This document shows positions 3,082 to 56,828 of a stretch of 64,000 nucleotides of DNA, in pieces. Location: the NCBI RefSeq assembly GCF_001194135.2, contig NC_068982.1, positions 92,448,572-92,512,571 of the forward strand, in the 5' to 3' direction. A program made the translations under genes and the position numbers. The stretch comes from Octopus bimaculoides (lineage: Eukaryota). Each line of letters starts with the position of its first letter. Positions within the stretch are counted from its first letter, which is position 1. Below the pieces are notes generated by a model. It was not told the origin of the DNA and did no database searches. It saw only the letters and a list, made by a program, of their open reading frames with translations.

Positions 3082-56828
<53,747 letters not shown>

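What the first reader, a model, noticed from the sequence alone, without database searches (positions are those of the whole stretch)
30638..30646. Second 9-nt microexon candidate with a proximal UGC motif
Seen: tttaactttctactcTGCacttattactttcag|GACTCTACC|gtaagtg in the middle of a 10.4-kb intron. It is symmetric phase 1 and turns HNE-G-IHQ into HNE-GLYR-IHQ. The close branch-like site and the TGC about 15 nt upstream of the AG match the known Srrm3/4 target architecture.
Basis: partly seen in the sequence, partly recalled or inferred. Interest (0 to 1): 0.7.

Follow-up and report, generated by a model that had tools for sequence, protein, structure and literature searches.

The report
Unproven 9-nt microexon candidate in CLEC16A
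A 9-base stretch with good splice signals does sit in a long intron of an invertebrate CLEC16A gene, but nothing beyond the motifs shows it is used, and related animals carry a different, 3-base mini-exon in that same intron.

Summary
The sequence is as described. GACTCTACC (30638-30646) lies between a pyrimidine-rich ...ctactcTGCacttattactttcag and gtaagtg, in the 10,455-nt intron between two CLEC16A exons. It is in frame and turns HNE-G-IHQ into HNE-GLYR-IHQ. Both splice sites score at the median of the gene's 19 real sites.

Sites of this quality are not rare. I expect about 0.07-0.09 chance pairs in this intron and 0.2-0.5 in the window. The TGC occurs upstream of 25% of pyrimidine-rich AGs here. 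No counterpart exists in the same intron of the six other taxa that could be scanned. The only close relative's contig stops 584 nt short. No RNA data were reachable.

The same intron in five other taxa, including a Meretrix clam, holds a 3-nt A-N-G exon. It has a UGC 5-10 nt before its AG and adds one Glu or Asp. A scan gave 7 hits inside that intron and 0 in 357 kb elsewhere. The window's likeliest counterpart is ATG at 29063-29065.

So the junction hosts a microexon in relatives, but the flagged 9-mer is not that exon. I put about 0.2-0.25 on it being a real, lineage-specific microexon, and consider a chance pseudo-exon more likely.

The parts
26495..26595 (+). Upstream constitutive CLEC16A exon (...[33 protein letters not shown] + G of the Gly codon); the donor is AAG|gtatgtga, phase 1
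   Evidence: The exon is conserved in L001-L010.
26596..37050 (+). Intron of 10,455 nt (includes 10-N gaps at 27256-27265 and 30997-31006) that holds the candidate
   Evidence: Intron position and phase are conserved in L002-L007.
29063..29065 (+). 3-nt candidate microexon ATG (cag|ATG|gtagggaac). It would give HNE-D-G and is the likeliest counterpart of the 3-nt A-N-G microexon seen in the same intron of other taxa. Its acceptor is weak.
   Evidence: The exon and donor are the same as in L005/L007, and it is kept in L001 at position 2962. The acceptor scores -3.2 bits and the donor -8.2 kcal/mol.
30591..30637 (+). 3' splice-site region of the 9-nt candidate. It holds a 45-nt AG-exclusion zone, CU-rich motifs, TTAAC (branch A at 30609, -29), TGC at 30620-30622 (-18) and a pyrimidine tract ending ctttcag.
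   Evidence: The acceptor scores 8.1 bits, the median of the real acceptors.
30638..30646 (+). The 9-nt candidate cassette microexon GACTCTACC (phase 1-1; it adds Leu-Tyr-Arg and keeps the Gly)
30647..30654 (+). 5' splice-site-like gtaagtgt. It forms six contiguous U1 base pairs, with no exonic pairing (ACC|).
   Evidence: U1 duplex energy -7.6 kcal/mol, the median of 19 real donors. Six of the 19 real donors also lack G at -1, and all six have gtaagt or gtaaga.
37051..37103 (+). Downstream constitutive exon (G)[17 protein letters not shown]
30411..30438 (.). Left arm of an imperfect 28-nt inverted repeat (86% complementary; 14 nt are perfect, 30421-30434) that brackets the candidate. The right arm is 30787-30814.
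   Evidence: the stem appears in the MFE fold; z = -2.84 for 30400-30825
30787..30814 (.). Right arm of the same inverted repeat

Best explanation
The 9-mer is most likely an intronic pseudo-exon. A good acceptor-like site and a GTAAGT happen to lie 9 nt apart in a 10.4-kb AT-rich intron of CLEC16A, and it is not a conserved part of the gene. The microexon that belongs to this exon junction in related animals is a different one. It is a 3-nt A-N-G exon with a UGC just upstream of its AG, the arrangement expected of SRRM/eMIC-type regulation, and it inserts a single acidic residue between HN[E/D/N] and Gly. Its probable remnant or counterpart in the window is ATG at 29063-29065, 1.6 kb upstream of the flagged site. 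Shown here: the sequence, the frame, the splice-site scores, the chance rates, the absence of a 9-nt counterpart elsewhere, and the recurrence of the 3-nt exon. Inferred: that the 9-mer is not spliced in, and that the 3-nt exons are used and depend on eMIC proteins.
For: Chance rate. I expect 0.059 pairs per spacing at the candidate's own scores. That is about 0.5 in-frame pairs per window and 0.07-0.09 in this intron. The looser background across 357 kb of related loci is similar, about 1-1.5 hits per length per strand. Neither splice site exceeds the gene's median. The GTAAGT sits in a local cluster, with 3 of the window's 21 GTAAGT within 30416-30652 plus a GAAAGTAAG tandem. Independence of sites therefore understates the local chance rate. 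There is no 9-nt counterpart in the homologous intron of L002/L003, L004, L005, L006 or L007, nor in the parts of that intron held for L008-L010. The length profile across all loci spikes only at 3 nt, with 7 hits in the target intron against about 0.3 for other lengths. At 9 nt there are 2 hits, which is background. The 3-nt exons recur with UGC at -5 to -10 and all add Glu or Asp. Leu-Tyr-Arg is unlike that. About 35 spliced CLEC16A proteins from other phyla all show the skipped junction. The one vertebrate CLEC16A neural microexon I found listed in the literature is 6 nt. By my inference it lies elsewhere in the gene (PMC8797185 suppl. file 4; PMC12871342).
Against: It is the only candidate of this quality in its intron. 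It is frame-preserving and free of stops. It has UGC and CU-rich motifs in the expected order: branch point, then UGC, then AG. On stricter pattern criteria the + strand has more in-frame microexon-like pairs than expected. With Py>=0.7 and GTAAGT there are 4 observed against about 0.5 expected, and none on the minus strand. At median thresholds all four intronic pairs are multiples of 3. The window's 3-nt ATG has a poor acceptor and has lost the proximal UGC, so the ancestral microexon may be defunct here. That would leave room for a replacement. The missing conservation was tested only against distant taxa.
Confidence: 0.55

Rival explanations
1. It is a genuine, lineage-specific cassette microexon of CLEC16A. 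It would be included in neurons when an eMIC-containing Srrm234 protein binds the UGC at -18 and helps U2AF and U2 recognise the 3' splice site, while the GTAAGT donor recruits U1. The product would carry Leu-Tyr-Arg in the turn after the ...[10 protein letters not shown] helix.
For: The acceptor (8.1 bits) and donor (-7.6 kcal/mol) are both canonical and of median strength. It is in frame and open. UGC, UCUC/CUCU motifs and TTAAC at -29 lie in the published order (bioRxiv 10.1101/2024.09.17.613571; PMC8797185). It is unique in its intron at this quality, with an expected chance count of 0.07-0.09. The same junction takes a microexon in other taxa, so an insertion here is tolerated and the gene is under microexon regulation. 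Vertebrate CLEC16A also has a neural microexon.
Against: There is no counterpart in any other locus and no transcript evidence. The prior for a second, independent microexon in one intron is low. UGC is uninformative here, with a 25% background. The 3' splice site is strong with an ordinary AG-exclusion zone, not the weak, extended type described for eMIC targets. The encoded residues are unlike the acidic residue added by the conserved 3-nt exon.
Confidence: 0.23
2. The splice-like motifs belong to a structured or transposon-derived intronic element. A roughly 400-nt segment is bracketed by 28-nt inverted repeats, like a miniature inverted-repeat element. The motifs would be incidental, or at most act as decoy or poison splice sites.
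For: The inverted repeat 30411-30438 / 30787-30814 has a perfect 14-nt core. There is also a perfect 13-bp hairpin at 30486-30514 and a GAAAGTAAG tandem. The segment folds better than all 100 shuffles, z = -2.84. GTAAG motifs cluster at 30405, 30416, 30495 and 30647. Using the next GT (a 15-nt exon) or the 21-nt pair at 30474-30494 would bring a TGA into frame (my own translation of the sequence read and listed).
Against: There are no further copies of the segment in the window or in any fetched locus. No target-site duplication is evident. The long-range stem is absent from the centroid structure.
Confidence: 0.1

Closest known systems
SRRM3/SRRM4 (eMIC-domain) dependent neural microexons
   Same: The length is within 3-27 nt and preserves the frame. 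A UGC lies between the likely branch point and the AG, CU-rich motifs lie upstream, and the donor is GTAAGT. The host gene is a trafficking/autophagy gene of a kind often carrying such exons.
   Different: The 3' splice site is of ordinary strength, with an ordinary AG-exclusion zone (45 nt) and a 29-nt branch distance. Published targets have the pyrimidine tract and branch point displaced upstream. No tissue regulation, eMIC dependence or conservation has been shown.
Vertebrate CLEC16A neural microexon (mouse MmuEX0011633, 6 nt, chr16:10572918-10572923; listed as a conserved human-chicken neural microexon)
   Same: It is in the same gene, it is a frame-preserving neural microexon, and its function is unknown (PMC8797185 suppl. 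file 4; PMC12871342 Table 1).
   Different: The position differs. The mouse exon lies about 28 kb into a roughly 200-kb gene. By my inference from a recalled human sequence (NVYK-VS-LDNQ against the window's NVYR-V-DDK), it sits at the junction matching window intron 6170-7893, not at HNE|G. Length and sequence also differ.
The 3-nt A-N-G microexon candidates found here in the orthologous intron (L002/L003, L004, L005/L007, L008, and L009 = Meretrix sp.)
   Same: They lie in the same intron, in the same phase, at the same protein junction, and have a UGC-bearing 3' splice site.
   Different: They are 3 nt rather than 9 nt and add Glu or Asp rather than Leu-Tyr-Arg. Their UGC is at -5 to -10 rather than -18, and they recur across taxa while the 9-mer does not. 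The window's likeliest counterpart is ATG at 29063-29065.
Intronic pseudo-exons (paired cryptic splice sites that are not used)
   Same: It is a pair of consensus-like sites deep in a long intron, with no conservation and no transcript support.
   Different: Pseudo-exons are usually of ordinary exon length. Here the pair is 9 nt apart, in frame and open.

Membership tests
eMIC (SRRM3/4, Srrm234)-dependent neural microexon | Exon of 3-27 nt that preserves the reading frame | tested here: met
   9 nt, phase 1-1, GLYR with no stop
eMIC (SRRM3/4, Srrm234)-dependent neural microexon | UGC motif between the branch point / pyrimidine tract and the AG, with UCUC-type motifs upstream (bipartite enhancer) | tested here: met
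   TGC is at -18, there are 3 CU motifs within 62 nt, and TTAAC is at -29. Specificity is low: 25% of pyrimidine-rich AGs in the window have a TGC at -27..-5.
eMIC (SRRM3/4, Srrm234)-dependent neural microexon | Long branch-point-to-AG distance, long AG-exclusion zone and a weak 3' splice-site context | tested here: not met
   The AG-exclusion zone is 45 nt, against a gene median of about 49. The acceptor scores 8.1 bits, the median of real constitutive acceptors. The pyrimidine tract runs up to the AG.
eMIC (SRRM3/4, Srrm234)-dependent neural microexon | Strong 5' splice site (mammalian targets) | tested here: inconclusive
   GTAAGT gives six U1 pairs but no exonic pairing. The energy of -7.6 kcal/mol is the median of the 19 real donors.
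eMIC (SRRM3/4, Srrm234)-dependent neural microexon | Neural-enriched inclusion that depends on the eMIC protein | not testable with these tools
   No RNA-seq reads or expression data were reachable. Spliced proteins in the database come from other phyla and show the skipped form.
eMIC (SRRM3/4, Srrm234)-dependent neural microexon | Conservation of the exon and its flanks across species | tested here: not met
   No 9-nt counterpart in the same intron of L002-L010. The close relative L001 does not reach the site, so short-range conservation is untested.
CLEC16A (host gene) | FPL and CLEC16A_C domains, with collinearity to animal CLEC16A | tested here: met
   Pfam FPL 157 bits and CLEC16A_C 134 + 534 bits. 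19 GT-AG exons are collinear with a recalled human sequence. There are 218 homologues.
Orthologue of the vertebrate CLEC16A 6-nt neural microexon | Same exon junction as the vertebrate microexon | tested here: inconclusive
   The mouse coordinates place it early in the gene. My mapping to the NVYK|V junction rests on a recalled human protein sequence, not on a retrieved record.

The most novel reading that the evidence does not exclude
Microexon turnover at a fixed protein site. The ancestral 3-nt acidic microexon of this CLEC16A intron decayed in the window's lineage. Its UGC became GGC and 7 nt were inserted into its pyrimidine tract at 29063. A new UGC-dependent 9-nt microexon then arose 1.6 kb downstream, inserting a different peptide (Leu-Tyr-Arg) at exactly the same junction.
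Probability: 0.1. Interest if true: 0.6.

Novelty: new member of a known kind. Interest (0 to 1): 0.3.

Why it matters
If the 9-mer were used, it would be one more lineage-specific microexon in a conserved endolysosomal and autophagy regulator. That would interest specialists in microexon evolution but would not be surprising. The more useful result is comparative. The HN[E/D/N]|G junction of CLEC16A carries a recurrent 3-nt, UGC-associated exon in several invertebrates, at least one of them a bivalve. This gives a concrete and testable case of a very small microexon outside vertebrates and insects. It also gives a yardstick against which single-genome 'AG-N9-GTAAGT' candidates like this one look weak.

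Tried and rejected
1. Searching for spliced products across the junction. A profile of the skipped and included forms found only genomic exon-A read-through ORFs. A later 372-aa query found 218 CLEC16A proteins, none from a close relative and none with an insertion at the junction.

2. Reaching the close relative's copy of the site. L001 stops at window 30054. A 1,538-aa concatenate of all ORFs of at least 40 aa from 29300-32300 found no homologue. An exact 21-mer scan of metagenome contigs found nothing. A protein-guided scan found only two distant loci.

3. Intron-to-intron alignment among loci. Only L005 and L007 align, and no cross-taxon conserved island was found.

4. Repeat origin. No other copy of 30380-30850 exists in the window or the fetched loci.

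5. Rfam and tRNA scans of the window were empty.

6. A simple position matrix for the donor gave 4.0 bits. I rejected it as misleading because it cannot model the dependence between a missing -1 G and GTAAGT that 6 of the 19 real donors show. I replaced it with U1 duplex energy.

7. Supplement searches for CLEC16A in PMC12871342, PMC12626424 and PMC7821500 were empty.

8. Recursive splicing was rejected. After the first splice the junction GAAG|GACTCT does not rebuild a 5' splice site.

9. ORFs inside the intron had no Pfam hit.

Full report
**What is there.** The + strand at 30638-30646 reads GACTCTACC. It is preceded by ...tttaactttctactcTGCacttattactttcag and followed by gtaagtg, exactly as reported. 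The window is AT-rich animal DNA (about 32% GC).

**The host gene.** The + strand carries a CLEC16A orthologue. I placed 19 exons between 3082 and 49257, all with GT-AG introns. I used tblastn with a human CLEC16A sequence recalled from memory as a guide only, then joined and translated the exons. The joined products hit Pfam FPL (157 bits) and CLEC16A_C (134 and 534 bits).

The candidate's flanking exons are 26495-26595 (...LLYAMGHNE, ending AATGAAG|gtatgtg, phase 1) and 37051-37103 (ag|GAATACACC..., [17 protein letters not shown]). The intron is 10,455 nt as assembled and includes two 10-N gaps. The candidate lies 4,042 nt into it. Inclusion changes HNE-G-IHQ to HNE-GLYR-IHQ with no stop.

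**How good are the signals?**
- I trained an acceptor matrix on the 19 real acceptors. The candidate scores 8.1 bits. Leave-one-out scores of the real sites run from -3.5 to 13.1 with a median of 7.8.
- A simple donor matrix gave only 4.0 bits because the exon ends in ACC. However, 6 of the 19 real donors also lack G at -1, and all six compensate with gtaagt or gtaaga. I therefore scored donors by U1 duplex energy. The candidate scores -7.6 kcal/mol, exactly the median of the real donors.
- The AG-exclusion zone is 45 nt, ordinary for this gene. TGC lies at -18. There are three CU-rich motifs within 62 nt. The plausible branch site is TTAAC with its A at -29, and the yTnAy at -11 is too close to be used.

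**How does this compare with published eMIC targets?** Published SRRM3/4 targets have a UCUC...UGC enhancer between the branch point and the AG, and a strong 5' splice site. Their pyrimidine tract and branch point are displaced upstream, which gives a weak 3' splice site and a long AG-exclusion zone (bioRxiv 10.1101/2024.09.17.613571; PMC8797185).

The candidate has the UGC and CU motifs but an ordinary, fairly strong 3' splice site. The UGC also says little here. 25% of pyrimidine-rich AGs in the window have a TGC at -27..-5.

**Chance.**
- By pattern: 77 AGs with at least 78% pyrimidines upstream and 21 GTAAGT on the + strand give 0.025 expected pairs per fixed spacing, or 0.23 for the nine in-frame lengths from 3 to 27 nt.
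- By score: at the candidate's own thresholds there are 60 acceptors and 63 donors. That gives 0.059 per spacing, about 0.5 in-frame pairs per window and 0.07-0.09 in this intron.
- An independent background from about 357 kb of related loci agrees.

So the candidate is the best in its intron, but one such pair per two to five genes of this size is expected by chance.

Two points favour it. On the stricter pattern the + strand has more in-frame pairs than expected and the minus strand has none. At median thresholds all four intronic pairs are multiples of three.

One point counts against it. Three of the window's 21 GTAAGT lie within 30416-30652, next to a GAAAGTAAG tandem, a perfect 13-bp hairpin and a 28-nt inverted repeat that brackets the site. 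Local sequence is therefore not independent, and the chance rate is higher here than the window average suggests.

**Conservation.** Exon-A read-through ORFs led to orthologous loci.
- L001 comes from a close relative, with 80-91% intronic identity. It ends at window 30054, 584 nt short of the site.
- I could not reach the rest of that relative's intron. No homologue was found for any ORF of at least 40 aa from 29300-32300. An exact-match scan and a protein-guided scan of metagenome contigs also failed.
- L002/L003, L004, L005, L006 and L007 keep the same intron position and phase. L008-L010 hold only the first 0.5-1.1 kb of the intron. L009 is Illumina genomic data from a Meretrix clam.
- None of them has a 9-nt counterpart. 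Introns align only between L005 and L007.

**What the comparison did reveal.** In the same intron, five independent taxa have a 3-nt candidate exon A-N-G with a UGC 5-10 nt before its AG.

| Locus | Position | Sequence |
|---|---|---|
| L002/L003 | 11420 | ttttttgctaacag\|AGG\|gtaagtc |
| L004 | 10291 | tttccctgcag\|AAG\|gtaaggt |
| L005, L007 | 12438, 14867 | ttattgctgcag\|ATG\|gtagggt |
| L008 | 3109 | tttctgcatacag\|AGG\|gtatgtt |
| L009 | 4145 | ttttgctatcag\|AAG\|gttggta |

Each adds one Glu or Asp before the Gly. I scanned all loci and the window on both strands, requiring an acceptor of at least 4 bits, a donor of -6 kcal/mol or better, and a UGC within 14 nt. All 7 hits fell in the target intron (39.8 kb) and none in the other 357 kb. 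Without the UGC filter the split is 8 inside to 2 outside. Scanning lengths 1-30 shows a spike only at 3 nt.

The criteria were set after I had seen the first cases, but the contrast is large. I take this as good evidence for a conserved 3-nt microexon at this junction.

In the window the best counterpart is ATG at 29063-29065 (cag|ATG|gtagggaac). It has the same exon and donor as L005/L007 and is kept in L001. Its pyrimidine tract is poor (-3.2 bits), and it reads GGC where L002 has UGC. It is not a unique conservation peak against L001, so it too is unproven.

**Transcripts and literature.** About 35 spliced CLEC16A proteins from arthropods, vertebrates, rotifers and others cover the junction, and all show the skipped form. 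Vertebrate CLEC16A has a conserved neural microexon (PMC12871342 Table 1). In mouse it is 6 nt, at chr16:10572918-10572923 (PMC8797185 suppl. file 4). By position, and by a two-residue difference at the NVYK|V junction in my recalled human sequence, I infer that it maps to window intron 6170-7893 and not to this junction.

**Verdict.** The motif is real and reads as a plausible microexon, but nothing beyond the motif supports it. It is not the microexon that relatives carry in this intron.

| Explanation | Probability |
|---|---|
| Unused pseudo-exon | about 0.55 |
| Genuine lineage-specific (possibly eMIC-type) microexon | about 0.23 |
| Incidental part of a structured or repeat-derived element | about 0.1 |
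| Unassigned | remainder |

Junction reads from this species would settle it.

Noticed in passing
L002 11420-11422; L003 11421-11423; L004 10291-10293; L005 12438-12440; L007 14867-14869; L008 3109-3111; L009 4145-4147; window 29063-29065; L001 2962-2964: A recurrent 3-nt A-N-G candidate microexon lies in the intron homologous to window 26596-37050. In the loci other than the window and L001, a UGC lies 5-10 nt before its AG. It adds one Glu or Asp at HN[E/D/N]-G. All 7 strict hits fall in this intron and none in 357 kb elsewhere. The window and L001 copy (ATG|gtagggaac) has a weak acceptor and no proximal UGC.
   Followed up: yes
Its acceptor scores 10.0 bits and its donor -7.5 kcal/mol, so the acceptor is stronger than at 30638 and the donor about equal. 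In phase 2 it would change Asp to Glu-Trp-Arg-Asn. The exons encoding the first 68 or so residues of CLEC16A were not found in 1-3081 and probably lie outside the window.
   Followed up: partly
window 7235-7258: A 24-nt in-frame, open pair (ttttttcag|TATATCATTGGAAGACATTGTCAG|gtatggag; 7.7 bits, -7.7 kcal/mol) lies in intron 6170-7893. By inference, this is the intron that matches the position of the vertebrate 6-nt CLEC16A neural microexon. Its AG-exclusion zone is only 10 nt.
   Followed up: partly
window 30411-30438 / 30787-30814, and 30486-30514: An imperfect 28-nt inverted repeat (14 nt perfect) brackets the 9-nt candidate. Inside it is a perfect 13-bp hairpin with a 3-nt loop, whose 5' arm and loop contain another GTAAGT. 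The 426-nt segment folds better than all 100 shuffles (z = -2.84). No other copies were found.
   Followed up: partly
window 10363-10734, 21055-21064, 27256-27265, 30997-31006, 49521-49542, 53809-54292, 54810-55098: These are runs of N (assembly gaps). The one at 30997-31006 sits between (TA)n and (CA)n microsatellites 350 nt downstream of the candidate. Intron lengths are therefore approximate.
   Followed up: no
L005 6941-6943 and L007 6023-6025: A second conserved 3-nt pair (ttttcag|CGG|gtgagag) lies in an upstream part of the CLEC16A locus in two related species. These were the only strict 3-nt hits outside the target intron.
   Followed up: no
L005 9949-10023; L007 8190-8273 and 8310-8381: Partial, stop-containing extra copies of exon A lie just upstream of the intact exon A in two related species. 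They look like local duplications of the exon.
   Followed up: no
L006 15101-16148: Five overlapping called ORFs sit about 187 nt apart, and four of them have CLEC16A_C hits. This suggests a tandemly repeated exon segment or an assembly artefact.
   Followed up: no
L002, L003, L006 (about 14590-14820): The exons matching window 37219-37288 and 39008-39162 are contiguous in these loci, while the window has a 1.7-kb intron between them. An intron was lost there or gained in the window's lineage.
   Followed up: no
window 41723-41749: A 27-nt in-frame, open pair (ATATCTGTTTGCTATATTTTTACCTTT|gtaagttt) lies 72 nt downstream of exon 41531-41651. Its scores are weak (4.3 bits, -5.4 kcal/mol) and it is probably chance.
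   Followed up: no
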